Positions 5,835 to 44,484 of a DNA stretch of 64,000 nucleotides are shown piece after piece. Within the stretch, counting starts at the first letter, position 1; each line of letters starts with the position of its first letter. The position numbers and the translations under genes were made by a program. A model generated the notes under the pieces. The model did no database searches, was not told the DNA's origin, and saw only the letters and a program-made list of their open reading frames with translations. Origin of the DNA: Rebecca billardiae RCC1528. Its lineage: Eukaryota; Protista; Haptophyta. The stretch spans positions 2,604,001-2,668,000 of the forward strand of contig OZ251228.1 of NCBI GenBank assembly GCA_965240325.2, written 5' to 3'.

Positions 5835-8191
5835 GGGACCGCAACTACTGCATCTTCCACGCGCTCGTCAACGCGTTCGGCGAGGGCAACACCGTGCTCA
5901 TGGAGCGCGTGCGCGAGCTCGTCGGTGACGAGAAGCTCAAGAAGATGGCCGACCTCCAGGGCGTGAAGGTGGGCGAGCGCAACAAGCGCAAGTTCCTCAC
6001 GGGCGTGTGGCTCTTCGACTCGCCGGTCAACCACTTCATCTACCGGCTGTGCATCTACCTGGCGCCGCACTCGGACAAGGACTGGGCAAAGGGCATGCGC
6101 TTCATCGAGTGGGTGCTCGCCAACTGCGAGCTGGGCGAGGACGAGAAGTACGTGCTCGAGGGGCTGAGCGCCATCCACGGCTCGCGCAACGGCGTCTTCT
6201 GGGTGAGCGCGCGCGCCCCCGCGCGCGTGCTCGCCTGCGCGCACGCGCGCGCGCGCACGCGCGCCCGGACTCTGGGCACGAGCGGACCACCGCCCCAGCT
6301 GCGCGGGCGCGACGTGACCCGCGCATCCGTGCGCGCCCTCCGCCGCTCGCGTGCCCCGCGCCGGCCCCAACAGAAGAACGCGGTTGCCGTCTTCTTCTGG
6401 CGCGACCGCATCATCCAGTTCCTCGAGCACATGCAGGAGGTGCAGACGGCGCAGCGCGGCGACTCGGGCGGCAAGACGCGCGACTACCTGCTCGAGATGC
6501 TGAAGGACGAGAACGTGTACAAGGCGATCGGTGTCATGGCGATGCACTACCTCGCCGTGTACATGCCCGCGATCGGCGCCATCACCCACGTGGAGCACCT
6601 GTACGACCTCGAGCGCGTCTGCAACGATGTCTACACCAAGATGTGCGCGCTCAAGGCGGACCCGCTCTCGCTCTTCCGCGGCGAGTTCAAGCTGTTCGAC
6701 GATTATCGCAACGCCGTGATCGCGCGCAAGCTCGCCGCCGTCACCGCCGCCTTCGCGCCCTCGGGCGCCGACTCGGTCGACGGCGACGTCCGGGAGATGG
6801 TCGGGCTCGTCGCGGGCGGGATCGCGGAGAAGTGGCACCAGCACACGCAGGAGTGGCAGCGCGTCGAGCACGTCCAGCCGGGCGAGGAGGGCTACGAGGC
6901 CGCGCACAGGGAGTGGGAGAAGCGCGGCTCGCTCCACCTGCAGCGGCCCGACTGGCAGCGCGAGCGGAGCTGCAACGTGAAGCCGACCGGCTGCTGCGTG
7001 GAGCGCGTGTTTGGGATCGGCAACTACATCGCCGACAAGACGAACTGCTGCCTGCGCGCCGACCGGCTCGAGGGGCGCGTGCAGTGCAAGTACAACGACT
7101 CGATCGAGTACGTCCTCACCAACGAGCTGTTCGTGCACCCGGCCGGCCCGCAGCGCGCCGCGGCGGGCGCCGCGCTCAACAAGACGCTGCGCGAGCTCCT
7201 GCAGCGGATGTGCCGCCGCCTCGGCACGATCTATGACATGCTGCGGCGCGCCGGGCTGATCGCGATGCGCCAGGACGAGGAGATGAAGGCGAAGGGCCGC
7301 GCAGCGAAGGAGAAGCGCGAGGCGGAGGCGGCGAGGATGCTCGCCATCGTGCTGCTCAACACGTGGGACGAGCTCAAGGACCTCACCGTCGAGCAGCTCA
7401 AGGAGCAGGTGAGGGCGCGCAAGTTCCGCGGGGCGAGCGTGCTGCTGCGCGATGCGGCGAGCGGGAAGTCGTGCCTGCGCACGCTCAACAAGCTCCTCGG
7501 GCTGGGCGTCCCGGACGCGCAAATCGCCGGCAACAAGCCCACGCGGGCGAAGAAGCGCAAGAAGGGGCCGGTGCAGTACTACGTCGAGCGCGTGCACGCG
7601 GCCCTGGTCGTCGACGGCCAGCGCGTGTACCTCGTCGAGTGGAAGGGCTATCCGGACGAGGCCGACTACACCTGGGAGATCATGTCGAACTTCATCTCGG
7701 ACGGGGCCATCCACGCCGAGACGGAGCAGCAGATCGTCGAGCTCGACGCGGTGACGGAGGAGGACGTCATCGCGCTCGACGAGATGGCGCAGCTGGTGGA
7801 CGAGGCGAGCGTCTGCGCGATCGACGCGGGCGCGCGCGTGGTCGTGGACACGGGCGAGTCCTGGCTGCCGGGCGCTGCTCAGTCGGCTCTGCCGCGCGAC
7901 GCGCGGCCGTCGGAGGTCGCGAGCGTGCTCGTGGACGGCGCTGCGCAGCCCGCGCCGTACGCGCGGAGCGCCCTGCTCGTCGTGCCGGCCACGACGCCCA
8001 TCCGCGTCGGCGCACTCGTCCGAGTCGCCTTTGCCGACGACCGCGCGCCCATCACCGGGCGGCGCTGGCAGTACGGCAAGGTGACCAAGGTGAGTGCGAC
8101 GACGCAGCTGTGCAGCATTGACTTCGACAACGGGGAGAAGATGGAGGACTGCCCGCTGTTCGAGGTGCAGCTCGTCCAGGCCACGCCCTAG
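5835..8191 (+). CDS. DDE transposase-like protein (CxxH clade) with SAP-like, chromo and Tudor-like domains; 5' part disrupted
   Basis: Strong coding bias. Motifs: NYCIFHAL (CxxH), HGSRNGVFW-KNA across an in-frame intron (6203-6373), and PTGCCVERVFG (catalytic E region). Chromodomain YYVERV...YLVEWKGYPDEADYTWE at ~7577-7696; Tudor-like IRVGALVRVAF...WQYGKVTKV...IDFDNGE at ~8000-8170. A possible upstream exon remnant (LAGDQAAEKVNAE) lies at ~5380-5418. Confidence 0.7.
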
Positions 8192-23281: not shown

Positions 23282-24451
23282 TCAGGAGTACACGGAGAAG
23301 CTGACGTCTCGGCCGAGGCCACCTGTGCGAATGACGCTGGTCGAGTCGCTGCGCCGCACCTCCAGCGGCGGCGCGCCGACCGACGAGCTGGACGGCGCCG
23401 CGCCGATCTCGCGCTCCAGCGCGCGCACGCGCCGCACGAGCTCGGCGTTGGTCGGCGTCGGCACGCCGGACGCCGCGCCGCGTCTCACCACCTCGCCGTT
23501 TAGATGGTCGATCTCGGTCTGGCGGCGCGCGTTGATGTCCTCGAGCATCGACGACTTGAACGTGTCGCTCCCGAGCGGGTGGCGACCGAGGACGGGCGTG
23601 AGAACCGCGCAGGCGGCGCGCAGCGCCCAGTTGAGCGCGCGCAGCGAGAGCGCGCGCGCCATGAAGGGCAGCCAGCGCGCGGCGCGCGGCTCCACGGCCT
23701 CGCCCTGCGCGCGGTACACGGCGGCGAGCTCGGCCATCGAGTCGGCGGCGAGCTGGCACGAGGCGCGGTCGAGGGCCATCCGGCCCAGGGGTAGGCGGCT
23801 CAGCGCGTTCGGCGCGTTCAGCATATTGAGCATCAGCTTGCCGCGCTGCAGCCGCGCAAACGGCTCGGGCGGCACGGAGCGCGTCGACACGTGCGCGGCA
23901 CTCAGCAGCGCGCACAGCTCCGGCTGGCCGTCGATGAGCAGGAGCGGGAGGATGCCCGAGCACACGACGCGGCCCTCGGCGTGGAGCATCGTCACCGAGA
24001 TCCGCACGACGGCGGCGTGGATCGGCCAGCCACGCGCGAGCTCGCCGATCAGCGCGCGCATCTCCTCGACGGCGCCGAGCCCGTTCTGCAGGAGGACGAT
24101 CGGCGTGCCGGCTGTGACGTGCGCGCCGAGGTGGGTGGCGACCTCGGCGTTGGAGTGGCGCTTGGTGGCGACGATGATCGCGCTCGCGCTGCTCAGCACG
24201 CTCGCGTCGTACGTGAACGCGCGCGCACAAATGCTCGGCGGCAGCGTGCGCCGAGCCGCGCCCGCCCCCTCCTCCAGCGTGAGGCCTCGCGTCGTGACGG
24301 CGGCGCGCAGCTCTTTGCCCGTCACCGACGGGCGCTGCAGGAAGGTGACGCGCGCGACGCCGCGCAGGGCCAGCTTGCCACCGACCCACGTTCCGATGGA
24401 CCCCGCACCGACAATGACGATGTGCCGCTCGGCGCCACGATCGTCGGCCAT
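23282..24451 (-). CDS. panE: Ketopantoate reductase (PanE/ApbA family)
   Basis: Rossmann motif IVIVGAGSIG, plus VATK, LLQNGLG, KLMLN and SSMLEDINARRQTEIDHLNGEVVRRG. Confidence 0.92.
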   Translation of the reverse strand: MADDRGAERHIVIVGAGSIGTWVGGKLALRGVARVTFLQRPSVTGKELRAAVTTRGLTLEEGAGAARRTLPPSICARAFTYDASVLSSASAIIVATKRHSNAEVATHLGAHVTAGTPIVLLQNGLGAVEEMRALIGELARGWPIHAAVVRISVTMLHAEGRVVCSGILPLLLIDGQPELCALLSAAHVSTRSVPPEPFARLQRGKLMLNMLNAPNALSRLPLGRMALDRASCQLAADSMAELAAVYRAQGEAVEPRAARWLPFMARALSLRALNWALRAACAVLTPVLGRHPLGSDTFKSSMLEDINARRQTEIDHLNGEVVRRGAASGVPTPTNAELVRRVRALEREIGAAPSSSSVGAPPLEVRRSDSTSVIRTGGLGRDVSFSVYS

Positions 24452-24639
24452 GGCTGACACGTGTTCGCGGAGGTGACTTTTGGCGACGGCAAATCCGGGC
24501 GCGCGGTGGCGGCCCAGTCCTGGCCCAATTTCCGCGAACCATCTTTATTCTTTTCCATCACCGCGAGCGTGCTACGTGCGGTGGCGTGTTGTCCGGCGCG
24601 ATACACACGCCGGTGACGAATGATGATGCACTTTTGAAT

Positions 24640-29021: not shown

Positions 29022-29891
29022 CCGGCAGGTCAGCGATCCACTAAAAAACGACAGGTTTCCAGCAAGGGACCAACCGGTCCAGAGGTACCTCAGGATTTGG
29101 GAAACTCGGAAAATGAGAGAAATTCAAAACCCGCCGCGTGCGCCCGCCACAGCCATCCGCCGCGAGGCGCCGCCCGCTGCCGCGCCGCCGCGGTCGTAGA
29201 CGTGCACGCGGCGATGGCGCACGCGGTCGGGCAGAGGCGCAGCACTGTTCTGCGCCGCCCTGCGCCGGGCGACTCGCGTCTGCCCATCTTCTCCGCGCCT
29301 TGAGCCCGCACGGACGTGTGCGCCGCCTCTCGGGCTTCAGCCGGCTGTCATCCCCACAAAATATACGCGCGCTGAGAGCAACCCGAGGCGCGCATCCCAT
29401 GAACGCGTGAGCCATGTTACAGTACGGTCGTAGACGCACGCCATGGTGCCCAGCGGCTTCCCGCGCGTGCGTGCCTCCCTGCTTCCTCGGCAGGCAAGGC
29501 GCCCATGTCTCTGGCTGAATGTGGCGGCGGCGCAAGCTCGCGCTCGCGCGGGCCTCAAGCTGACCTTCGAGGTGCGAGGGCGCAAAGTGCTGCGCCACGC
29601 GCATGCTACAGTAGTTCCCCGCCTCGCTACCGCCCCGCTGCGTCCCATCGGAAGCTCTTCTGGACATCGCGCGGCCTCGCCCTGGCGGCGGTAGGCGCGG
29701 GCGAGGTGGCGGCGGGCTGGCAAATCCCAAGGGAGGTCCGGGCCGGGAGCTCCCAGCGAGCGGCCGGCGCGACGTCACTGCAAAGTTTTCCCTGAGCGCC
29801 GGGCGGCGGCGGCGCGCCAACGGCACAGCGCGAAGGCGGGAGAGCGGAGTTCGTCGTCAGCCCGGGCGGCGCGAGCTCTTCACCTCGCGCG

Positions 29892-32576
29892 ATGGCGAAC
29901 GCCGACGCCGAGCAGCCGGCCGAGCAGCGTGCTGATACGAGTGTAGCTCCTGGCTCGATTCCCCGCACGCTTGCCCAGCTTCGACCGTCGACGGCGAACT
30001 CGCCGCCTCGAACGGGCGCAGGCGACGATGCTGCATGTGTCGAGCAGCCAGACATGTGCGTCGTGGAGCAGGCGATCCGAGGCGAGCTCGACGACGGCTG
30101 GACGCTCCAGAAGTTCGAGCAAGCAGACACTGGCTCCGCTGGGATCCCGAAGGCGATGACCCAGAAGCTCGTCGTCACGCGCATTGCGTTTGCACAGGAG
30201 TCAACGACCTTTGCGGCGGAGGGCATGCCCGCGATCACGCGGTGCTTCACGGTGGACTCGCACGGCCAGCTGCTTATTTGCATCGGCGGTTGCAAGCTGG
30301 GGCCCTCGTTCTTGTGCACATGCAGCACGCGCGATCTCGCCATCCGCGGCGACAACTGCATCTGCATCTCGGGCGCGGTGCAGGACATCGAGGCACGCGC
30401 CAGGGGCCTGCGCTCGGGGGCTATGTCTGACTCGGCGCTCTCGGCAAAGTGGAAGGAGATCACGGTGCTTCTCGTTGGCAGCGAAGTGTGTGCGGGCGTG
30501 CGCAACACCGAGTGGTACCGCAAGGCCGTCGAGGACCCATCGGAGGTGCGCAAACTAAGCGCGCGCGTGTGCGAGCAGTACACGGACGATGGCGCTGTTG
30601 TGCAGTGCTTCAAGTCCCCGCACTGCTCAGCGCTCGTCTTCCGCGGCTCCGGCGTCGGGCAGAAGGCGCACATGCTCAACGGGGCAAGTGTATGCGACCA
30701 GTGCTACAACCTGCGCAATATCCTTCGAAACAGTGCCATCGCCAAGGACACCGCGCGCATCCTCAGCGCGCGGACCGACCTTGGCCGCTGCTCGCGCGGA
30801 GTCGCGTGCGTTCAGCTCGTGCAAAGGCACGATCTCGCCCGCGAGGAGAACGCGGCGCTCAAAGCGGAGATCGCGGCATTGCGGCAGCAGATCGAGCAGA
30901 CCGGCGTGCGCGTCGCCACGGACAATCCGAAGAAGCAGGAGATGCTCGATTTCATGATGACCGAGGTGAAACGCTTTGTGGAGCAGCCGCAGGCAGTCGA
31001 ACTGATGACGTCGCAGGAGTACCGCAAGTACCGCGCGATGAAGGACTTGGAGTACAGCTATCGCCAGGAGCAGGGCACGCTGAGCGGCATGCGCTGGGAC
31101 AACCGCACGTTCGCGCTCGCGTGGAAGGCCACGGTCGACAACCCGTCCGCCGCCGCCGCGCTGCATCAGTCTGGCCTCTTCACGCTGCCCGACTACCGGC
31201 TGATGAAGCGCTACCGCTCGAAGCGCATCGCGCACATCAACGGCAATTCCGATGCCTTCTACTCGGAGCTCGGGGTCCGGACGGCGCACCTGACTGGGCA
31301 GGCTCGGCTCGGCGTGCTGGGCTTCGACGGCATTCACGTCGAGCAGGACGTCATCATGTCCAAGCTCGGCAACGGCGAGCTCGATTGGTGGGGCTCTGTC
31401 TCGCGCTCCGAGCAGGCAGAGAACGGCGGGCAGCTCGCGCTCGCCAGCGAGGCGCTCGTCTTCCTGTTCCAACCGCTGATGGAGAAGAAGAAGAAGAAGG
31501 GCGAGCGCCAGGAGTCGTACGTTGGCGGCGTCTTCCCGGGCTCCTCGTTCGACGCGGGCCGGATCGGCCACTTCGCCGATCAGGTCAAGGGCAACCTCTA
31601 CCTACTGGCGCGTCTCGAGGTGATCGCCCACTCGTGTGATGGCTTGGCGGCCAACCGACTGTACTTCAAGGTGGACACGGAGGGCATGAAGGCCTTCTGC
31701 TCGGGCGCGTACGAGTTCCGCATAGCGTGCGCGTCGAGCGCGATCACGGCTGGCGGCCGGGACGCGTACATCATGGATCCGACGCACAACGAGAAGAAGG
31801 CGGTCAGGTTGGTGATGAGCTCGCGTGTTGGCGGCCGACGATCCATGTACAACCCGCTGCTGGGCGAGTGCGGTTGGATCACGCGCGACACGATCATCCG
31901 TCTCGACAAGTGGCAGACGGACAAGTTGGTCAAGCTGTACCACACGCTGAGCAAGCGGGTGGTCGACTTCGAGAAGCGCGATGCGATGAGCGTGCCAGTC
32001 GCGCGCGCCCTCATGAACGAGGGCTTTCTCGAGACGATCGAGTGGGCGCGCGAGCACGGCTTCACCCACGCGCAGTTCACAGAGGGCTTCGTGGGATTCT
32101 TCAAGACGATGCTCGAGATCCACGAGCCGCTGCGCGGCGGTGGCAAGGGCTTCTCGAGCAGCAAGGACCCGCGGCTGCTGCAGATGATTGACGCCCTCGC
32201 CGCGCTCCAGGAGTGGCACGACAGCTTCGCCACAGCCAAGGCGCGCGCGCGCGGCTTCTTGTCGTCGCAGTTCTGGGCTGACCTGCACTACATGGTGCAC
32301 GGCTTCCAGGGGGTCCTCGTCGAGCTCGAGCGTCGATTCGGCGTCGGTGGCTTCGCACCGATCGACCCGACCTCGGCGGCGCAGGACCGGCTCGAGCGGC
32401 TCTTTGGGCAGGCGCGCGCGCTCAAGCAGGGTGGGCAGATCAACGTCTTTGACTTGATGTGCGGCATCCAGACGATCGTCGAGGACCAGCGCGCTGTCAA
32501 CGCGCAGTTCTCTTTGTGCGGGAAGCGCAGTCGTGAGAAGGGCAACTGCGGTGACGACATGACTAAGGACGGCTGA
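29892..32576 (+). CDS. P-element-type transposase (894 aa)
   Basis: Coiled coil, then GMRW, LPDYR, VLGFDGIHV (D), HSCDGLAANR (D), MDPTHNEK (DxxH), AMSV and QDRLERLFGQAR (E). The Cys-rich N-terminus has no canonical THAP motif. Confidence 0.92.
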   Translation: MANADAEQPAEQRADTSVAPGSIPRTLAQLRPSTANSPPRTGAGDDAACVEQPDMCVVEQAIRGELDDGWTLQKFEQADTGSAGIPKAMTQKLVVTRIAFAQESTTFAAEGMPAITRCFTVDSHGQLLICIGGCKLGPSFLCTCSTRDLAIRGDNCICISGAVQDIEARARGLRSGAMSDSALSAKWKEITVLLVGSEVCAGVRNTEWYRKAVEDPSEVRKLSARVCEQYTDDGAVVQCFKSPHCSALVFRGSGVGQKAHMLNGASVCDQCYNLRNILRNSAIAKDTARILSARTDLGRCSRGVACVQLVQRHDLAREENAALKAEIAALRQQIEQTGVRVATDNPKKQEMLDFMMTEVKRFVEQPQAVELMTSQEYRKYRAMKDLEYSYRQEQGTLSGMRWDNRTFALAWKATVDNPSAAAALHQSGLFTLPDYRLMKRYRSKRIAHINGNSDAFYSELGVRTAHLTGQARLGVLGFDGIHVEQDVIMSKLGNGELDWWGSVSRSEQAENGGQLALASEALVFLFQPLMEKKKKKGERQESYVGGVFPGSSFDAGRIGHFADQVKGNLYLLARLEVIAHSCDGLAANRLYFKVDTEGMKAFCSGAYEFRIACASSAITAGGRDAYIMDPTHNEKKAVRLVMSSRVGGRRSMYNPLLGECGWITRDTIIRLDKWQTDKLVKLYHTLSKRVVDFEKRDAMSVPVARALMNEGFLETIEWAREHGFTHAQFTEGFVGFFKTMLEIHEPLRGGGKGFSSSKDPRLLQMIDALAALQEWHDSFATAKARARGFLSSQFWADLHYMVHGFQGVLVELERRFGVGGFAPIDPTSAAQDRLERLFGQARALKQGGQINVFDLMCGIQTIVEDQRAVNAQFSLCGKRSREKGNCGDDMTKDG

Positions 32577-32698
32577 CTCTGATGACGATGATACGATTCT
32601 CGATTCTCTCTATCTTTCTCTCTCGATCATATGCATACGTATATATATCAGCAGCTCGCAAGACGGTAGTAGTGTCGTCACTGACGGCCCCTGCGGCC

Positions 32699-34726
32699 CT
32701 ACGACTCGGCATCCGCATCGCCGCCATCCTCGGCGTCCATCATGCTCGCATCAGAGTCGGTGTCGTCGTCATCGTCACCATCACGCGCCGATCGAGCAGA
32801 GGTGGGGCGCGTTCGCTGCTGCGTCGCCTTGCGGAGCTTCCCACGAAGCGAGCCCTTCAAGCTCTCAAGCGCGGAGCCGCTCGTGCTCGGCTTCTTCTTC
32901 TTCTGAGTCTTCTTCTTCCTCTTGGCCGCAGCCGCGCGCTTGGCCTTGAGCTGCTTCTCACGCGCGTCCTTCAGCTTGCGCGCCACGTACTTGCGGAAGC
33001 TGTTGTAGAAGCTGTTGAGGTACTGGCGCACGTACATGCGCCGCGCGAAGCCAAGAACCTCCGAGCTCTGCCACGATGCACACGCGGTGACCAACTGTCG
33101 CCACTTGCTCGACAGCGCCTGGTCGCAGAGCAGCATGGTCGTGCAGGCCTGCAGCTCGCCAGGCTGGATCAGCACGCCCGCCAGCTTGACGCGAGCGCGC
33201 TCCTCGAGCAGCACACAAAAGTCGACGAGCTCCTGCCGACACCGTGTCAGCTTGACGACGCGAGACCGGTCGACCATGTTGAGCATCTCCGTTTCCGCGT
33301 TGTGCACGTCGGTGCCACGCGTCACCGCACACGCTTTGAAGAACAGAATCAGCTCCTCGCGAGCGCTCCCGCCCTCGCCCTTGTCGAGACGCGCGTCCAC
33401 GGCGAAAAGCGCCCAGCCGCCGACGCGCCGGATCGCGGCGCGGTCGGCGAGGTCGAAGCTCTCGTCGGGATCGAACGCGACGCCGACGGTGCGCTCCAAA
33501 GGTGTGCACTGCCGCCCGAGCACCCGCTCCTCGGCCACCAAAAGCGGGTAATTCGCATCAAAGACCTCGATCTGGCAGCGCAGCACGAGCGCGCACACGA
33601 CGCTCGACCGAATGTTGAACTCGTTGCTGAACTCGACGATTTTCGGCGACTCGGGGGCGAAGTGCTCGCGCACCTCTTGGCGGAAGATAAGGCGGCAGGT
33701 GCGTGACGAGCGACCGTCGCCTTTCATGCCGAGATGCCGCGCGTACGCCCGCGGAAGTAGCTCGAGCAGCATCTGGTTCATGCGCTCGCCGACTGCAGCC
33801 AGATCGACCGATGCCAATTCCGGCGCGGCAGAGGGGAGGCGATCTTCCGTGAGTGGGTTGACGCCCAGCGCCTCCAGCTTCGACTGCCCAATGACGCCCT
33901 CGACGAGTCCGTTGACCACCTCGGCGACCTGGGCGTCGGCCTTCTCCTGCTGCGAGACCCTCAGCTTGCGCTTCTTGGCCGCTGGCGCGCCGGTGGCGAC
34001 CACGGCGGCAGCAGATGGTTGGCCGCCAGCATCAGCGTCGCCGCGCGGCGCGGCTGCCAGCTTGTCGGCGTGCTCGGGCATCCGCGCGCGGGCCTGTGCG
34101 CGCTCAAGAACCGCACGCTTCTGGTCCTCGCTCGCCATCGCGAGGTACGGCGCTCTCGCCTCTTCGTCGAGGGCGTTGTACGCGTCCTGTGCAGCCTTCT
34201 TGTCCTTGATCCAGTGGAACTTCTTCGCGGTGTTGCTCGCGGCGGCAAAGTCCTGTGCGAACTTGGTCTTGATGAAGCAGGTGAGGGCGCTCATCGCGTT
34301 CTTCACGCCCGTCGGCGCGTGCGCTTTCCGCTTCTTCGAGCTCGCCGGAGCCGCCGGAGCGCCCAGGTCTCCGCCGCGAGCCGAGCTGATCGAGCCATCA
34401 GCGTTGGCGTCGCGGGCTGCGGCCGGGACGAGTCCGGGCACGTCGCTCGGCAGGATCTCGGCGAGCGCGTCCGATCGACCAGGACCAGCACGAACACTCT
34501 CGTCGCCACCGCCGCCGCCGACTTCGAGCGCAGCCGCCGCCTCGGGCGCGTCTGCGCCCGGAGGCAGCTCGAGCGATCGCGCAGCTGGCGGCGGCAACGC
34601 AAGCGCCAGGATCTCGGCAGGTACGGCGGGCTTGCCCGTGGGTGCCAGCGGTGTACACGTACTCGCCAGGTGCGTCCGCTCGCTGCTGCCGTCCACGGCT
34701 CGCTCCGTGCCACCTGCGCCGCTCAT
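32699..34726 (-). CDS. Second P-element ORF: HMG-box-like domain plus region resembling the P-transposase C-terminal domain
   Basis: Intact 675-aa ORF inside the TIRs. KNAMSALTCF...YNALDEEARAPYLAMASEDQKR is HMG-like (~34095-34305). Also AIRRVGGWAL, VDRSRVVKLT and a basic tail ending SLRGKLRK. Confidence 0.8.
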   Translation of the reverse strand: MSGAGGTERAVDGSSERTHLASTCTPLAPTGKPAVPAEILALALPPPAARSLELPPGADAPEAAAALEVGGGGGDESVRAGPGRSDALAEILPSDVPGLVPAAARDANADGSISSARGGDLGAPAAPASSKKRKAHAPTGVKNAMSALTCFIKTKFAQDFAAASNTAKKFHWIKDKKAAQDAYNALDEEARAPYLAMASEDQKRAVLERAQARARMPEHADKLAAAPRGDADAGGQPSAAAVVATGAPAAKKRKLRVSQQEKADAQVAEVVNGLVEGVIGQSKLEALGVNPLTEDRLPSAAPELASVDLAAVGERMNQMLLELLPRAYARHLGMKGDGRSSRTCRLIFRQEVREHFAPESPKIVEFSNEFNIRSSVVCALVLRCQIEVFDANYPLLVAEERVLGRQCTPLERTVGVAFDPDESFDLADRAAIRRVGGWALFAVDARLDKGEGGSAREELILFFKACAVTRGTDVHNAETEMLNMVDRSRVVKLTRCRQELVDFCVLLEERARVKLAGVLIQPGELQACTTMLLCDQALSSKWRQLVTACASWQSSEVLGFARRMYVRQYLNSFYNSFRKYVARKLKDAREKQLKAKRAAAAKRKKKTQKKKKPSTSGSALESLKGSLRGKLRKATQQRTRPTSARSARDGDDDDDTDSDASMMDAEDGGDADAES

Positions 34727-35384
34727 CGCGCGACGAGCGCGGCGCGCGTCCGACGGTCGGGGTCCGCCTTCGCGCTGTGCCGTTGGCGCGCCGCCGCCGC
34801 CCGGCGCTCAGGGAAAACTTTGCAGTGACGTCGCGCCGGCCGCTCGCTGGGAGCTCCCGGCCCGGACCTCCCTTGCAAATCCCGAGGTCTGGACCGGTTG
34901 GAATGCCGGCGAATTCATCGCCAAGGCAATTTGGGCACGCGCCAGCCGTCCGCGATTTGCGCACCGCACAAGCTGGCCGGCATAAAGACTGGCCGATGTG
35001 GCGACGCTCCCATAGCTTTTTCTGACGGCCCGAGGTACGAGTGGTCGTTGGCCGCAAAACTACACGAAAATAAACATTTTGCTGCGTTTGCGGAAATGGC
35101 GACGCTCCCGGCCGCTCTGCCGCTGACTTCGCCCGCTGGCAGGCGCAGTGGGAGCCGACCACTCGTACCTTCGGGCGTCAGACAGGAGGTCGTGTACCGC
35201 CCGCGCGCCGCGGACTCGCACGGCGCGGAGAGGCCGCTCCAGGGGGCGACAGCCGCTTGGGCGCGGTCCACCTTGACGCCCTCGAGGGGCCCACAGCGCC
35301 GAACGCCCCTGCACGCTTCACCTCGCCGCGCGCGAGCGCGTTCAAAACGGCCTCCATCCTGAGGTCCATCCGCGGCCAGTCTTT

Positions 35385-36986
35385 ATGGTCGACGTGAGGA
35401 GCCCCAAGTGTGATCACGCCGGCTGCACCAAGGTGCCTTACTTCGGCATGCCGGGCGACGCGCGCGCCAGCCGGTGCGCTACGCACAAGCTGGCAGGCAT
35501 GGTCGACGTGAAGAACCCCAAATGTGATCACGCCGGCTGCACCACGCAGCCTTACTTCGGCATGCCGGGCGACGCGCGCGCCAGCCGGTGTGCTACGCAC
35601 AAGCTGGCCGGCATGGTCGACGTGAGGAGCCCCAAGTGTGATCACGCCGGCTGCACCACGCAGCCTTACTTCGGCATGCCGGGCGACGCGCGCGCCAGCC
35701 GGTGCGCTACGCACAAGCTGGCAGGCATGGTCGACGTGAAGAACCCCAAATGTGATCACGCCGGCTGCAGCACGCAGCCTTACTTCGGCATGCCGGGCGA
35801 CGCGCGCGCCAGCCGGTGTGCTACGCACAAGCTGGCCGGCATGGTCGACGTGAGGAGCCCCAAGTGTGATCACGCTGGCTGCACCAAGGTGCCTTACTTT
35901 GGCATGCCGGGCGACGCGCGCGCCAGCCGGTGTGCTACGCACAAGCTGGCCGGCATGGTCGACGTGAGGAGCCCCAAGTGTGATCACACCGGCTGCACCA
36001 CGCAGCCTTACTTCGGCATGCCGGGCGACGCGCGCGCCAGCCGGTGCGCCCCGCACAAGCTGGCCGGCATGGTCGACGTGAAGAGCCCCACGTGCGATCA
36101 CGCGGGCTGCGCCAAGCGGCCTTCATTCGGCATGCCGGGTGATTCGTGCGCCAGCCGGTGCGCTACGCACAAGCTGGCCAGCATGGTCAACGTGGTGAGC
36201 CGCAAGTGTGATCACACCGGCTGCACCAAGGTGCCTTCCTTCGGCATGCCGGGCGAGCGGCGCGCCAGCCGGTGCGCTGAGCACAAGCTGGCCGGCATGG
36301 TCGACCTGAATATTCGCATCAAGTGTGATCACACCGGCTGCACCAAGGGGCCTTCGTTCGGCATGCCAGGCGACGCGCGCGCCAGCCGGTGCGCTACGCA
36401 CAAGCTGGCCGGCATGGTCGACGTGGTGAGCCGCAAGTGTGATCACACCGGCTGCACCAAGGTGCCTTCCTTCGGCATGCCGGGCGAGCGGCGCGCCAGC
36501 CGGTGCGCTGAGCACAAGCTGGCCAGCATGGTCGACCTGAATAATCGCATCAAGTGTGATCACACCGGCTGCACCAAGGGGCCTTCGTTCGGCATGCCAG
36601 GCGACGCGCGCGCCAGCCGGTGCGCTACGCACAAGCTGGCCGGCATGGTCGACGTGGTGAGCCGCAAGTGTGATCACGCCGGCTGCACCAAGGTGCCTTC
36701 CTTCGGCATGCCGGGTGATTCGCGCGCCAGCCGGTGCGCTGAGCACAAGCTGGCAGGCATGGTCGACGTGAAGAACCCCAAATGTGATCACGCTGGCTAC
36801 ACCACGCAGCCTTCATTCGGCATGCCGGGCGACGCGCGCGCCAGCCGGTGCGCTGAGCACAAGCTGGCCGGCATGGTCGACGTGGTGAGCCGCAAGTGTG
36901 ATCACGCCGGCTGCACCAAGGTGCCTTCCTTCGGCATGCCGGGTGATTCGCGCGCCAGCCGGTGCGCTGAGCACAAGCTGGCAGGC
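35385..36986 (+). repeat. Coding minisatellite with 114/117-bp unit
   Basis: Near-identical nucleotide units, with a higher-order dimer (units 8-9 nearly equal 10-11). Confidence 0.97.
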
Positions 36987-37445
36987 ATGGTATGCAGTCG
37001 GCTCGCCGTCCCCAAGCGCAGGCTGGAGCATGGCACCGGTGACCAGGGCACGCGCGCCGCGGAGCGACGGCACAAACATAGCAGCCACATTGCCGCCGTT
37101 TCGGACGTCGCGCCTCGGCTATCGCCACCACCGCCACTGGTCGCAGTCGGCATGCCACTGGCAGCAGGCAGCATCGTCCGCTGGAGCTCGCCAGATGGCA
37201 CGAGCTATTCGGTTGGCGACGGGGTGGTCAACGGTGGTGCCCTGGGCCTGGGCGAGCAGCATCTGTCTGGCAACGCAGGTGACGCAACCCGGGCTGCCGC
37301 TGGCTGGTCTGGCATCTACGACCAGGGAGTCCAGGGACTACCAGCAGGCATCATCAACACCACACCGCTGCGCCAGGACTACCATCATCATCGATGGCGG
37401 CGGGAGCACGACAGCAGCAACCGCCGCAGGTCATGCCTGTGGTGA
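35385..37445 (+). CDS. EsV-1-7-type Cys/His repeat protein with 14 tandem repeats
   Basis: 14 units of 38-39 aa with C-x4-C...FG...C-x2-H-K..GMVDV at 35385-36986. The C-terminus homologous to the paralogue lies in another frame ending at 37648, so this copy may be frameshifted or spliced. Confidence 0.85.
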   Translation: MVDVRSPKCDHAGCTKVPYFGMPGDARASRCATHKLAGMVDVKNPKCDHAGCTTQPYFGMPGDARASRCATHKLAGMVDVRSPKCDHAGCTTQPYFGMPGDARASRCATHKLAGMVDVKNPKCDHAGCSTQPYFGMPGDARASRCATHKLAGMVDVRSPKCDHAGCTKVPYFGMPGDARASRCATHKLAGMVDVRSPKCDHTGCTTQPYFGMPGDARASRCAPHKLAGMVDVKSPTCDHAGCAKRPSFGMPGDSCASRCATHKLASMVNVVSRKCDHTGCTKVPSFGMPGERRASRCAEHKLAGMVDLNIRIKCDHTGCTKGPSFGMPGDARASRCATHKLAGMVDVVSRKCDHTGCTKVPSFGMPGERRASRCAEHKLASMVDLNNRIKCDHTGCTKGPSFGMPGDARASRCATHKLAGMVDVVSRKCDHAGCTKVPSFGMPGDSRASRCAEHKLAGMVDVKNPKCDHAGYTTQPSFGMPGDARASRCAEHKLAGMVDVVSRKCDHAGCTKVPSFGMPGDSRASRCAEHKLAGMVCSRLAVPKRRLEHGTGDQGTRAAERRHKHSSHIAAVSDVAPRLSPPPPLVAVGMPLAAGSIVRWSSPDGTSYSVGDGVVNGGALGLGEQHLSGNAGDATRAAAGWSGIYDQGVQGLPAGIINTTPLRQDYHHHRWRREHDSSNRRRSCLW

Positions 37446-37911: not shown

Positions 37912-38072
<161 letters not shown>

Positions 38073-38199
38073 TCGTCAGAGTCGACGTACTCCACACCTC
38101 CCAATAGACTGTGACTCAGACTCGTCTGCTATTTTCACTAAGTAATTACCCGCCCCTACTCAGGTTTCAGCACAGTCCGGGGGCGATCCGGATGACACC

Positions 38200-38201
38200 T
38201 A

Positions 38202-38294
<93 letters not shown>
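38200..38294. repeat. (ATCT)n + (AT)n compound microsatellite
   Basis: Seen directly in the sequence. Confidence 0.98.
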
Positions 38295-42874: not shown

Positions 42875-43287
42875 TGACGGAGGTGCCTTACTACGCGCAA
42901 TGTTGAGACAGCGGTGCGAAAAGGACGAATCTGTATTCGTTGATGGGATTACTCATCCGTACGTTATTTCGATCGCAAAACGCGCAAGACAGGGGCTGGC
43001 CAGGGTAGGGCTGGAGGCTTCGGCCGCCAGCCTGATCACCCGGAGCCCGTTATAAAGGGGAATTTAAAAAGTCCGGAAACCGACCAAGAATATTCGACAC
43101 CGTTCTCGCTTGCTGCCGTGACTCCCCCGTTGGCCCCTGGAGTGAACACGCGCGCCGAATGCGGGTTGGATTGCCCGTGGCGCAGAACGGGCGCGTGGCG
43201 CGTCACGCGCCTATGCGTCGGGTCACCCGGCTGGCCGTGGCCGCACACCGCGGGGCTCGTACATCGTCTCGCCACGCGCGCGCGAGG

Positions 43288-44484
43288 ATGCAGCTGTCGC
43301 GCGCACTCCGACTGGCCGCACTGGCGCTGGTGCTTCTGGTGGCTGTGGCTCGTGCGGAGGGCGAGCACGAGGGCGAGCATCACGCGCACGACGAGCACGA
43401 CGAGCACGACGAGCACCGCGACGAGGATGAGCACCACACGCCTCACGAGGACGGCGAGCACACGAGGGAAGCCATCCCGCAGCAGGTCTGGTCGGCGACG
43501 ATGGGCTCGTGCGCGGTTGTGAGCATGGTCACCTTCATCGGCGTGCTCCTGCTCGCCTTGCCCGCAGGGCGTAACCTCGTGCAGTCCCCGCGCGCCATGT
43601 CGGTGTCGGTTGGCTTTGCCGGCGGCGCGCTCCTCTCGGCGGCTGTCCTCCTCTTGCTCACAGAGTCGATGCGCATCCTGATGGTGGAGGGCATGGCGCA
43701 CAGCGAGCACGGCGATGATCCGCACTCGGCGGACAGTTTCATGTGGCAGTGGGGCGTGTGCGTGCTCGGCGGCGTCTTCCTGGTGATGCTTGTCGACGGC
43801 CTCGTCTCGAGCGCCGTCAAGCTCCACGACGGCCGCCGCACCGCGCCGCAGTCGCACGGCCGGATCACAGACGGCCCCCGTGCGGTGGATACGGCGGCGG
43901 AGGTGGAGGCGGCGGAGGCATCGGCGACGACGGCCACGACCACCAGCGCGGCGACGAGCGAGAGCGCGGAGACCGACGACAAGAAGGCGCTGCCCCTGCG
44001 CCGGCGCGCGCGGCTCTGCGTCGCCATCCTCGTGGGCGACCTCGCGCACAACTTCACCGACGGCGTCTTCATCGCCACCGCCTTTCTGGCGTGCAACTCC
44101 GTGCTGGGCTGGGTGGTCGTCCTCGGCACGGTGGCGCACGAGCTGCCGCAAGAGCTCTCGGACTACATGGTCCTCACGACGACCGCGCGGGTGACGCCGG
44201 CCACGGCGCTCCTGTGCAACTTTGGCGCCGGGCTCGCCGTCTTCCTCGGCGCGCTGCTCGTCCTCACGGTCGAGGTGTCCGCGCACGCGACCGCGCTGCT
44301 GCTCGCGCTCGGCGGCGGCTTCTACATTTACACGGCCCTCGCCGAGTGTGTGCCGGCCATGCTCAACGCGGAGACGACGGCGGAGCGCGCGGTTAGCCTC
44401 TGCGCGTTTGTCTTTGGCGCGACGGTCATCGGCCTTGTGCTGCTCAACCACCAGCACTGCGAGGTTGGCCATGCAGAGCACTGA
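43288..44484 (+). CDS. ZIP (SLC39, LIV-1-type) zinc transporter
   Basis: Signal peptide, His/acid-rich N-terminus, GFAGGALL, GDLAHNFTDG, HELPQELSD, GGFYIY and multiple TM segments. Confidence 0.95.
   Translation: MQLSRALRLAALALVLLVAVARAEGEHEGEHHAHDEHDEHDEHRDEDEHHTPHEDGEHTREAIPQQVWSATMGSCAVVSMVTFIGVLLLALPAGRNLVQSPRAMSVSVGFAGGALLSAAVLLLLTESMRILMVEGMAHSEHGDDPHSADSFMWQWGVCVLGGVFLVMLVDGLVSSAVKLHDGRRTAPQSHGRITDGPRAVDTAAEVEAAEASATTATTTSAATSESAETDDKKALPLRRRARLCVAILVGDLAHNFTDGVFIATAFLACNSVLGWVVVLGTVAHELPQELSDYMVLTTTARVTPATALLCNFGAGLAVFLGALLVLTVEVSAHATALLLALGGGFYIYTALAECVPAMLNAETTAERAVSLCAFVFGATVIGLVLLNHQHCEVGHAEH

What the first reader, a model, noticed from the sequence alone, without database searches (positions are those of the whole stretch)
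29728..34875. Two-gene P transposon: an apparently split transposase, with an HMG box plus C-terminal-domain-like region on the convergent gene
Seen: both ORFs are intact, start 53 and 38 bp inside identical TIRs, and converge on a 122-bp spacer. The transposase ends ~60 aa after the catalytic QDxLE motif and has no canonical THAP. Known: Drosophila P and THAP9-type transposases are single proteins with an N-terminal THAP and a C-terminal domain containing YIAGY and RGGL-like motifs, while convergent TIR-driven gene pairs are the MuDR mudrA/mudrB layout. Inference: ORF2 motifs AIRRVGGWAL and VDRSRVVKLT resemble that missing domain, and its HMG box could supply DNA bending as host HMGB does for RAG and Sleeping Beauty. 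This would be a two-subunit P transposase that carries its own bending factor. Perfect TIRs and TSD suggest a recent insertion.
Basis: partly seen in the sequence, partly recalled or inferred. Interest (0 to 1): 0.85.

Follow-up and report, generated by a model that had tools for sequence, protein, structure and literature searches.

The report
Two-gene P-like transposon with HMG-box gene
This is an intact, recently inserted cut-and-paste transposon in a GC-rich eukaryotic genome, carrying a divergent P-element-type transposase plus a second gene for an HMG-box DNA-binding protein; the idea that this second gene supplies a missing piece of the transposase could not be supported.

Summary
A 5,148-bp element (29728-34875) has perfect 112-nt terminal inverted repeats and a perfect 7-9-bp target-site duplication. 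It carries two intact convergent ORFs of 894 and 675 aa, separated by a 122-bp AT-rich spacer. Both ORFs show strong coding periodicity.

ORF1 is most likely a very divergent P-superfamily DDE transposase:
- The only transposase families in Pfam that it or its one relative touches are P-type, and all these hits are sub-threshold.
- It has the D-D-[D(2)H]-E signature with P-like spacing.
- It has no THAP finger and ends 59 aa after the catalytic E. Its only known relative, from a freshwater metagenome, ends at the same place, so the short C-terminus is a lineage trait.

ORF2 contains a genuine but divergent HMGB-type HMG box, followed by an orphan ~265-aa region, a very basic helix and an acidic tail.

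The claim that ORF2 carries the missing P C-terminal domain has no support. Pfam gives no hit, 1.84 billion proteins contain no homologue of that region, and the structure model there is uninformative. The one relative shows no second gene where ORF2 would lie.

Best reading: an autonomous P-like element with its own HMG-box accessory or bending factor, at moderate confidence. It is a new variant of a known kind, resting on a single copy.

The parts
29721..29727 (.). Left copy of the target-site duplication (CAAATCC). The identical 9-mer GCAAATCCC spans 29720-29728.
   Evidence: read directly from the sequence.
29728..29839 (+). Left terminal inverted repeat, 112 nt, starting CAAGGGAGG. It contains the palindromes GGGAGCTCCC and GGCGCGCC and has no ATG.
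   Evidence: I1, 100% complementary; 0 matches expected by chance.
29892..32576 (+). ORF1, 894 aa: a divergent P-superfamily-type DDE transposase. It has no THAP finger and no P-type C-terminal domain.
   Evidence: GC3 0.87. PF21788 E=0.1; homologue P0001 at 1e-93 over residues 50-887. P0001 hits PF21788 at 1.4e-4 and PF21787 at 0.063.
30315..30704 (+). Conserved Cys-rich N-terminal region (residues 142-271). It holds CxC-x11-CxC and C-x17-C-x22-CxxC, all invariant with P0001. Inferred to be a non-THAP zinc-binding, end-recognition domain.
   Evidence: invariant C142, 144, 156, 158, 227, 245, 268, 271; no C2CH pattern; no Pfam family.
30840..30899 (+). Heptad-like helical stretch (residues 317-336, REENAALKAEIAALRQQIEQ). 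It sits where P transposase has its leucine-zipper dimerisation segment.
   Evidence: The position relative to the catalytic core is an inference.
31326..32396 (+). Catalytic core: D479, D583, D629-x-x-H632 and E835 (within QDRLE). About 200 aa of helical insertion lie between D(2)H and E.
   Evidence: all invariant with P0001. The spacing was compared with DmTNP D230/D303/D339/E531 and hTHAP9 D304/D374/D414/E613 (PMC8230255). PF21788 hits fall at residues 663-741.
32577..32698 (.). 122-bp AT-rich spacer between the two stop codons. Presumed to be the shared 3'-end/terminator region of the convergent genes.
   Evidence: sequence. The function is inferred.
32699..34726 (-). ORF2, 675 aa: an HMG-box protein with an orphan C-terminal region.
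   Evidence: GC3 0.82.
34088..34336 (-). HMG box of HMGB/NHP6 type (ORF2 residues 131-213), preceded by the basic KKRK motif.
   Evidence: phmmer E=2.1e-5 and 5.4e-4 against 1.84 billion proteins. Both hits are bona fide HMG_box proteins. PDB NHP1 E=0.0033. AlphaFold pLDDT 68-92. Foldseek HMGB1 A box prob 0.99, target TM 0.59-0.72. Pfam itself is sub-threshold (E=0.037).
33062..33856 (-). Orphan region of ORF2 (residues 291-555). No detectable relative or confident fold was found.
32702..33061 (-). Very basic helix and tail (residues 556-650; 31 K+R; pI 11.7; KRKKKTQKKKK), followed by an acidic tail (residues 651-675; 13 D/E of 25).
   Evidence: (terminal helix pLDDT 75-91).
34764..34875 (-). 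Right terminal inverted repeat, 112 nt.
   Evidence: I1.
34876..34882 (.). Right copy of the target-site duplication (CAAATCC).

Best explanation
This is an autonomous, recently inserted cut-and-paste DNA transposon of a deeply divergent lineage of the P superfamily, sitting in non-coding DNA just upstream of an EsV-1-7 repeat gene of a GC-rich eukaryote.

ORF1 is the DDE transposase. In order, it has a conserved Cys-rich (non-THAP) N-terminal region, a short coiled coil, and a split RNase H core (D479, D583, D(2)H629-632, E835) interrupted by a ~200-aa helical insertion domain related to the P GTP-binding insertion domain. It has no C-terminal domain, and this is a trait of the lineage and not a truncation.

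ORF2 is an element-borne accessory protein. It has nuclear-localisation-like basic motifs, one HMGB-type HMG box, an orphan middle region, a long basic helix and an acidic tail.

Inferred mechanism:
- Each gene is transcribed inward from its identical TIR and ends in the shared AT-rich spacer.
- The HMG-box protein binds and bends the long TIR DNA and helps the transposase build the paired-end complex. Host HMGB1 does this for Sleeping Beauty and RAG1/2.
- The transposase then makes staggered cuts that give a 7-9-bp duplication.

Shown: the anatomy, the coding signal, the DDE signature, the HMG box and the conserved short C-terminus. Inferred: TIR promoters, DNA bending, any requirement for ORF2, and activity.
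For: - Anatomy: perfect 112-nt TIRs plus a perfect TSD.
- Coding: both ORFs have strong third-position GC periodicity, and their antisense ORFs do not.
- Start codons: each ATG is the first ATG read inward from its terminus, and both share the context TCGCGCGATG.
- Spacer: AT-rich.
- ORF1 family: the only transposase families in Pfam touched by ORF1 or P0001 are P-type and collinear. These are PF21788 at E=0.1 and 1.4e-4 (22.7 bits against a cut-off of 24.8) and PF21787 at 0.063.
- Signature: D-104-D-46-D(2)H-~200-E, invariant between ORF1 and P0001. This compares with DmTNP D-73-D-36-D(2)H-192-E and hTHAP9.
- TSD: 7-9 bp fits the P superfamily, where Galileo/1360 give 7, P gives 8 and BuT5/D. 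buzzatii P give 8-9.
- Short C-terminus: P0001 ends at the aligned position, with a conserved REK..NCG end.
- HMG box.
- Precedent: host HMGB1 is a bending cofactor recruited to Sleeping Beauty TIRs and assists RAG1/2 (PMC7827188).
- An intact HMG box requires translation from M1, because the next in-frame Met lies inside the box.
Against: - All Pfam hits for ORF1 are below the curated thresholds.
- Neither ORF1 nor the ORF1/P0001 profile hits any PDB chain meaningfully at E<=10. The ORF1 model is unusable, with pLDDT 35.
- Only one copy and one relative exist in all collections searched. No co-occurrence or conservation test of ORF2 was therefore possible.
- The relative shows no ORF2-like or coding-like sequence within 633 bp downstream or 3.2 kb upstream. 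This argues that ORF2 is not a universal part of the lineage.
- The HMG fold prediction used an alignment containing two HMG-box proteins, which biases it toward that fold.
- No expression or activity data exist.
Confidence: 0.5

Rival explanations
1. One reading: a split P transposase. ORF1 supplies the catalytic core. ORF2 supplies in trans the missing DNA-contacting C-terminal domain, plus an HMG box for bending, so that transposition needs both subunits.
For: - ORF1 and P0001 both lack the ~185-aa CTD that DmTNP has at residues 566-751.
- In the DmTNP structure the CTD is all-helical and joined by a flexible, disordered linker. [quoted passage not shown] Delivery in trans is therefore sterically conceivable.
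- The ORF2 C-terminal half is predicted to be mostly helical and ends in a long, very basic helix.
Against: - No detectable similarity. There is no Pfam family, including Tnp_P_element_C, for ORF2 or its pieces at E<=10. There is no PDB sequence hit other than HMG boxes. No P-transposase chain appears among the top Foldseek matches, although the model is unreliable there.
- That region has no homologues at all.
- The one relative has the same short transposase and no second gene where ORF2 would lie.
- The orphan region plus basic tail (~360 aa) is about twice the size of the CTD.
- ORF1 has ~250 extra conserved N-terminal residues that could equally compensate.
- The motif resemblance was recalled from memory and could not be tested.
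Confidence: 0.1
2. ORF2 is a passenger: a host-derived or otherwise acquired HMG-box gene picked up by this one element or young family. It would have no role in the chemistry of transposition, and at most a regulatory or host-directed role.
For: - ORF2 is an orphan outside the HMG box.
- The relative lacks it in the equivalent position.
- The nearest HMG-box matches are ordinary cellular or giant-virus HMG proteins with no transposase nearby.
- Codon-position GC does not distinguish ORF2 from a host gene.
Against: - ORF2 is a complete, intronless 675-codon ORF.
- Its first ATG lies 38 nt inside the TIR, mirroring ORF1, with the same ATG context and a shared AT-rich 3' spacer. That is not the fragmentary layout typical of captured host DNA.
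- No paralogue occurs in the 64-kb window.
- The rest of the genome could not be searched.
Confidence: 0.3
3. ORF1 is not a P-type enzyme but belongs to another superfamily with C/D(2)H-type DDE cores. A Mutator-like element is one candidate, given the long TIRs, a possible 9-bp TSD and MuDR-like convergent genes. hAT is another, given a possible 8-bp TSD.
For: - The TSD can be read as 8 or 9 bp.
- 112-nt TIRs and convergent genes recall MuDR (established knowledge).
- All P-family Pfam hits are sub-threshold.
Against: - No MULE, Transposase_mut, hAT-dimerisation or other transposase family appears, even at E<=10. Only P-type families do, in the correct order.
- The ~250-aa distance from the second D to E, with a ~200-aa insertion after D(2)H, matches P and THAP9.
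- The motif around the second D (VIAHSCDG) resembles the THAP9 motif GITVLAVTSD.
Confidence: 0.1
4. ORF2 is not a real gene but a chance open frame in 68% GC DNA.
For: Long spurious ORFs are common here. Examples are the 374- and 457-aa frames antisense to ORF2. The first ~100 codons of ORF2 have weak periodicity.
Against: - GC3 is 0.81-0.89 and GC2 is 0.40-0.52 across codons 100-600.
- There is a significant HMG-box match in this frame.
- The amino-acid composition is protein-like, and an AT-rich spacer begins right after the stop.
Confidence: 0.03

Closest known systems
P superfamily transposons (Drosophila P element, THAP9/Pdre2, Galileo, 1360)
   Same: - Cut-and-paste TIR element with a 7-9-bp TSD.
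- DDE core with a D(2)H motif after the second D and a ~200-aa helical insertion domain before E.
- Coiled coil upstream of the core.
- Weak, collinear Pfam matches to the P-type RNase H N-terminal and GTP-binding insertion domains.
- Long TIRs also occur in Galileo.
   Different: - No THAP C2CH finger; a different conserved Cys-rich region takes its place.
- No C-terminal domain; the protein ends 59 aa after E.
- The first and second D are 104 residues apart instead of ~70.
- A second, convergent gene is present.
- Sequence similarity is too low for any curated threshold.
MuDR (maize Mutator) two-gene layout: mudrA and mudrB
   Same: Long TIRs with two convergent genes, each starting just inside a TIR and ending in a short shared intergenic region. 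The second gene is lineage-restricted and has no enzymatic motif.
   Different: There is no homology to MURA or MURB. The DDE spacing and the Pfam signal point to P and not to MULE. The second gene here has a recognisable HMG box.
PIF/Harbinger (transposase plus a Myb/SANT-like DNA-binding protein)
   Same: A two-protein system in which a separate element-encoded DNA-binding protein assists the DDE transposase. This is the nearest functional analogy for the preferred model.
   Different: A different superfamily with a 3-bp TSD and short TIRs. The accessory protein has a Myb/SANT domain and not an HMG box. No homology.
Host HMGB1 as cofactor of Sleeping Beauty and RAG1/2
   Same: An HMGB-type box that bends DNA to help assemble the synaptic complex on composite or long terminal repeats.
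   Different: In those systems the factor is a host protein recruited by the transposase. Here an HMG-box protein is encoded inside the element, and its function is untested.

Membership tests
P superfamily DDE transposase | DDE triad with P-like spacing: second D to E about 230-250 residues | tested here: met
   D479, D583 and E835 are invariant between ORF1 and P0001. The spacing is 104 and 252, against 73 and 228 in DmTNP and 70 and 239 in hTHAP9. The assignment rests on motif and alignment, not on structure.
P superfamily DDE transposase | [C/D](2)H motif shortly after the second D, marking the start of the insertion domain | tested here: met
   D629-P-T-H632 in ORF1 and D-A-T-H in P0001, invariant, 46 residues after D583. 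The figure is 36 in DmTNP and 40 in hTHAP9. The motif is shared with some other superfamilies.
P superfamily DDE transposase | Insertion domain homologous to the P GTP-binding insertion domain (Pfam PF21788), plus the RNase H N and C halves (PF21787, PF21789) | tested here: inconclusive
   PF21788: E=0.1 (13.4 bits) in ORF1, and E=1.4e-4 (22.7 bits, cut-off 24.8) in P0001 at the homologous place. PF21787: E=0.063 in P0001. PF21789: not seen. No PDB sequence hit to P transposase.
P superfamily DDE transposase | N-terminal THAP (C2CH) zinc finger | tested here: not met
   No Pfam THAP hit at E<=10 on residues 1-303. No C-x2-4-C-x30-60-C-x2-H pattern in ORF1 or P0001. Conserved CxC..CxC and C-x17-C-x22-CxxC motifs are present instead.
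P superfamily DDE transposase | C-terminal domain after the RNase H fold (DmTNP 566-751; Pfam Tnp_P_element_C) | tested here: not met
   ORF1 ends 59 aa after E835, and P0001 ends at the aligned position. No Pfam hit on ORF1 residues 800-894 or on ORF2 pieces.
P superfamily DDE transposase | TIRs and a 7-9-bp target-site duplication | tested here: met
   112-nt perfect TIRs. A flanking direct repeat readable as 7, 8 or 9 bp. Family values are 7, 8 and 8-9 bp.
P superfamily DDE transposase | GTP-dependent transposition | not testable with these tools
   This needs biochemistry. No reliable alignment to the DmTNP GTP-contacting residues could be made.
HMG-box domain (Pfam PF00505) | Significant sequence similarity to HMG boxes | tested here: met
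   ORF2 residues 131-223 match P0002 (E=2.1e-5) and P0003 (E=5.4e-4) in a 1.84-billion-protein search. Both carry PF00505, at 6.5e-64 and 1.4e-18. PDB NHP1 gives E=0.0033. The Pfam model itself is sub-threshold (E=0.037, 14.9 bits against 25.4).
HMG-box domain (Pfam PF00505) | L-shaped three-helix fold | tested here: met
   AlphaFold pLDDT is 68-92 over the box. Foldseek matches HMGB1 A box (prob 0.99, rmsd 2.7 A over 67 columns), HMGB2, Sox11 and UBF box 5, with target TM 0.59-0.72. Caveat: the input alignment contained two HMG-box sequences.
HMG-box domain (Pfam PF00505) | Binds and bends DNA | not testable with these tools
   This needs EMSA, circularisation or bending assays.
MuDR/Mutator-like elements | MURA-type transposase (Pfam MULE / Transposase_mut) with ~100 residues between the second D and E | tested here: not met
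   No such Pfam family appears at E<=1 for ORF1 or E<=10 for P0001. The distance from the second D to E is 252 residues. Only the gene layout is alike.

The most novel reading that the evidence does not exclude
The element encodes a two-subunit P-type transposase. ORF1, which lacks the C-terminal domain, would need ORF2 in trans. ORF2 would combine a functional replacement of the DNA-contacting C-terminal domain with a built-in HMG-box bending module. It would be the first P-superfamily element with a split enzyme and the first eukaryotic transposon shown to carry its own HMGB-like cofactor.
Probability: 0.1. Interest if true: 0.8.

Novelty: new variant of a known kind. Interest (0 to 1): 0.45.

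Why it matters
P elements are a textbook transposon family, and as far as I know every described member encodes a single THAP-bearing protein. My literature searches found no P-type element with a second gene and no DNA transposon encoding an HMG-box protein.

This element points to a protist lineage with three departures:
- it replaces the THAP finger;
- it dispenses with the C-terminal domain;
- in at least this element, it carries an HMG-box gene.

If ORF2 proves to be a dedicated accessory factor, a transposon would have internalised the DNA-bending help that Sleeping Beauty and RAG borrow from host HMGB1. It would also give a compact two-protein system in which to study how P-type transpososomes assemble on long TIRs.

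If ORF2 is only a passenger, the element is still a useful, apparently active representative of a barely sampled branch of the P superfamily.

Tried and rejected
- **Word-indexed protein searches.** Whole ORF1 and whole ORF2 found nothing. Restricting ORF1 to residues 420-894 found one relative, P0001.
- **Exhaustive phmmer.** ORF2 residues 125-600 against 1.84 billion proteins gave only two HMG-box hits and nothing for the C-terminal region.
- **Locus scans.** The ORF1/P0001 alignment re-found the same contig in metagenome contigs and nothing in viral contigs or genome contigs. The ORF2 C-terminal region found nothing in genome contigs or viral contigs. The TIR DNA found nothing in viral contigs.
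- **Exact look-ups.** ORF1 and ORF2 are not on record.
- **PDB sequence searches.** ORF1, the ORF1/P0001 profile and P0001 residues 380-834 gave no meaningful hit and no P transposase.
- **Structure prediction.** ORF1 with a 2-sequence alignment gave pLDDT 35, so it was not sent to Foldseek. ORF2 residues 125-600 were confident only in the HMG box and the last helix, so the Foldseek result says nothing about the C-terminal region.
- **Pfam on pieces.** The ORF2 C-terminal region, the ORF1 N-terminus and the ORF1 C-terminus gave nothing at E<=10.
- **TIRs in the relative.** No inverted repeat above shuffle level was found in L001-L003, and there is no similarity to the window's TIR.
- **ORF2 against ORF1 and P0001.** BLASTP found nothing.
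- **A hidden C-terminal exon of ORF1 on the + strand over ORF2.** Rejected, because those frames only mirror ORF2's codon pattern.
- **Insertion into an exon of the neighbouring EsV-1-7 gene.** The reconstructed empty site shows no open frame across the junction.
- **Context of the HMG relative P0003.** It lies on a giant-virus-like contig with no transposase nearby.
- **The YIAGY / RGGL motif comparison.** It could not be checked, because no tool gave me a P or THAP9 C-terminal sequence, and I did not type one from memory.

Full report

Yes. The arms 29728-29839 and 34764-34875 form a 112-nt inverted repeat with 100% complementarity (I1). A 30-nt probe from the terminus occurs only at these two places in the 64-kb window, against zero expected from shuffles. 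The element has no other copy or fragment in the window.

Between the repeats lie two ORFs. ORF1 is 29892-32576 on the + strand (894 aa). ORF2 is 32699-34726 on the - strand (675 aa). Their stop codons are 122 bp apart. The spacer is conspicuously AT-rich in a 65-70% GC context.

The start codons lie 53 and 38 nt inside the inner TIR ends. Each is the first ATG met when reading inward from its terminus, and both sit in the context TCGCGCGATG.

Long open frames are cheap in DNA this GC-rich; frames of 374 and 457 aa run antisense to ORF2. I therefore checked codon-position composition:

| Frame | GC1 | GC2 | GC3 |
|---|---|---|---|
| ORF1 | 0.62 | 0.46 | 0.87 |
| ORF2 | 0.69 | 0.50 | 0.82 |

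This pattern is sustained in sliding windows, whereas the antisense frames only mirror it. The first ~100 codons of ORF2 are weaker. However, the next in-frame Met lies inside the HMG box, so an intact box requires M1.

One correction concerns the target-site duplication. The flanking repeat is CAAATCC. However, the 9-mer GCAAATCCC occurs at both 29720-29728 and 34875-34883 and overlaps the terminal C/G of the TIRs. The duplication can therefore be read as 7, 8 or 9 bp.

Perfect TIRs, a perfect TSD and intact ORFs fit a recent insertion. The reconstructed empty site shows no reading frame across the junction. The element sits about 80 bp from a degenerate EsV-1-7-like unit and 510 bp upstream of a 14-unit EsV-1-7 repeat gene.

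**2. What is ORF1?**

Direct evidence is thin but consistent.

- Pfam gives only a sub-threshold match to the P-type GTP-binding insertion domain, PF21788, at E=0.1 over residues 663-741.
- Restricting the word-indexed search to residues 420-894 found one relative, P0001. It is 834 aa and comes from freshwater metagenome contigs. It is 30% identical over ORF1 residues 50-887, with tblastn E about 1e-93.
- P0001 hits the same Pfam family at the homologous position with E=1.4e-4 (22.7 bits; cut-off 24.8). It also hits the P-type RNase H N-terminal domain, PF21787, at E=0.063, upstream of the first hit and in the correct order.
- No other transposase family appears for either protein.

The alignment A1 shows these residues to be invariant:

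- D479 (GFDGIH in ORF1, NHDEIH in P0001)
- D583 (SCDG / SSDG)
- D629-x-x-H632
- E835 (QDRLE / QDRTE)

The P-superfamily signature is DDE plus a [C/D](2)H motif after the second D (PMC8230255). The spacings compare as follows:

| Protein | Catalytic residues | Spacing |
|---|---|---|
| DmTNP | D230, D303, D339, E531 | 73 - 36 - 192 |
| hTHAP9 | D304, D374, D414, E613 | 70 - 40 - 199 |
| ORF1 | D479, D583, D629, E835 | 104 - 46 - ~200 |

The sequence around the second D (VIAHSCDG) also resembles the THAP9 motif GITVLAVTSD listed in PMC10824691. TSDs of 7 (Galileo, 1360), 8 (P) and 8-9 bp (BuT5, D. buzzatii P) are the family values.

Against a firm assignment: no curated threshold is reached. The PDB sequence searches do not find P transposase. 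The AlphaFold model from the two-sequence alignment is useless, with mean pLDDT 35.

I put P-superfamily affiliation at about 0.75. A Mutator- or hAT-like alternative is suggested by the long TIRs, the convergent genes and a possible 8-9-bp TSD. It is disfavoured by the absence of any MULE or hAT Pfam signal and by the 252-residue distance from the second D to E.

**3. The missing parts of ORF1**

There is no THAP finger. Pfam gives no hit on residues 1-303 at E<=10, and neither protein has a C2CH pattern. Nine cysteines are conserved instead. They include CxC-x(5-11)-CxC and C-x17-C-x22-CxxC, followed by a heptad-like helix at residues 317-336. I infer a different zinc-binding end-recognition module followed by a dimerisation helix.

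According to PMC10824691, the RNase H domain of DmTNP ends at residue 566 and the C-terminal domain spans 566-751. ORF1 ends 59 residues after E835. P0001 ends at the aligned position with a conserved REK..NCG terminus. The short C-terminus is therefore an inherited feature of this lineage and not a truncation of this copy.

No + strand frame downstream of the stop looks coding.

**4. What is ORF2?**

Its architecture is:

| Residues | Feature |
|---|---|
| 1-125 | Acidic, Ala/Gly/Pro-rich low-complexity region |
| ~130-134 | KKRK motif |
| 131-213 | HMG box |
| ~216-290 | Linker with a second KKRK |
| 291-555 | Orphan region (pI 5.8) |
| 556-650 | Extremely basic stretch (31 K+R) forming a confidently predicted long helix |
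| 651-675 | Acidic tail (13 D/E of 25) |

The HMG box is real:

- phmmer against 1.84 billion representatives returns exactly two proteins, both aligned to this segment, at E=2.1e-5 and 5.4e-4.
- Both are bona fide HMG_box proteins.
- The PDB sequence search gives NHP1 at E=0.0033 and NHP6A at 0.17.
- The AlphaFold model has pLDDT 68-92 over the box.
- Foldseek matches HMGB1 A box (prob 0.99), HMGB2, Sox11 and UBF box 5, with target-normalised TM 0.59-0.72.

There are two caveats. Pfam's own model is sub-threshold (E=0.037). The alignment fed to AlphaFold contained the two HMG-box hits.

The best matches are HMGB/NHP6-type, that is, non-sequence-specific bending boxes.

**5. Does ORF2 carry the missing C-terminal domain?**

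Nothing I could run supports this.

- Pfam finds no family in ORF2 or in residues 276-600 or 376-500, even at E<=10.
- The exhaustive search finds no homologue of that region anywhere.
- Back-translated pattern scans of genome and viral collections find nothing.
- The model there has pLDDT <50, so the absence of a P-transposase match in Foldseek is uninformative.

What can be said in favour is only plausibility. In the DmTNP complex the CTD is all-helical and tethered by a disordered linker. [quoted passage not shown] A trans-acting substitute is therefore conceivable, and ORF2 ends in a long basic helix.

The one available comparison counts against it. The P0001 contigs are three near-identical assemblies. 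Only the transposase ORF there shows codon periodicity. There is no ORF2-like sequence within 633 bp downstream, where about 170 codons of ORF2 would lie in the window's layout, or within 3.2 kb upstream. Because no TIRs could be found in those contigs, the element's limits are unknown, and this evidence is suggestive only.

**6. Most likely mechanism**

I favour an autonomous P-like element whose second gene encodes an accessory nuclear DNA-binding and bending protein (confidence about 0.5). Under this reading:

- Each gene is read inward from its identical TIR and ends in the shared AT-rich spacer. This is a MuDR-like layout without MuDR homology.
- The HMG-box protein helps bend the 112-nt ends for synapsis. 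Host HMGB1 does this at Sleeping Beauty TIRs and for RAG1/2.
- The DDE enzyme then performs excision and staggered integration.

The mirrored placement of a complete intronless ORF just inside the TIR argues against a casual capture of host DNA. Even so, a passenger gene remains a serious rival (0.3). The split-enzyme model is a minority possibility (0.1).

**7. Novelty and verdict**

My literature searches found no description of a P-type element with a second gene, and none of a DNA transposon encoding an HMG-box protein. As far as I know, the combination of features is new.

It nevertheless rests on one copy and one distant relative.

I classify it as a new variant of a known kind, with interest 0.45.

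Noticed in passing
window 35385-37445 (+); also 34958-34983: Immediately right of the element lies a 686-aa ORF made of 14 tandem 114-bp units (88% matches) encoding EsV-1-7 cysteine-rich motifs (PF19114, E=1.6e-86). A degenerate unit (CAPHKLAGI) lies only ~80 bp from the insertion site, so the element sits in the 5' region of this repeat gene.
   Followed up: partly
window 5744-8188 (+): An 815-codon open frame with an extreme coding signature (GC3 0.95) and a chromodomain (PF00385, E=3.7e-6). It could be a chromatin protein or part of a chromovirus-type retroelement.
   Followed up: no
window 37915-38294: An (AT)78 microsatellite followed by (TATA)24. Together they lower the local GC to 0.45 in an otherwise 65-75% GC region.
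   Followed up: no
window 23285-24544 (-) and 43036-44481 (+): Ordinary host genes: a ketopantoate reductase (PF02558/PF08546) and a ZIP zinc transporter (PF02535). Few other long coding-like frames exist in the 64 kb, which suggests that host genes are intron-rich. The two transposon ORFs are intronless.
   Followed up: partly
L005 10001-10513 (also L006-L010): P0003, one of the two proteins closest to the ORF2 HMG box, lies on densely packed ~53% GC contigs. Its neighbours include a PIF1 helicase, an RNA polymerase Rpb1 fragment, glutaredoxin, ATG8 and arginase. That gene set looks like a giant virus. No transposase is nearby.
   Followed up: partly
L001 1910-2654: Upstream of the P0001 transposase gene are two pairs of ~75-80-bp direct repeats (84% and 77% identity). 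These may be subterminal repeats of that element. Its ends could not be located.
   Followed up: partly
window 35021-35047 / 35156-35182: A 27-nt inverted repeat (89% complementary, 108 nt apart) lies in the right flank, between the element and the EsV-1-7 gene.
   Followed up: no
window 54000-60000: A block of very high GC (0.72-0.81) with strong negative AT skew, unlike the rest of the window.
   Followed up: no
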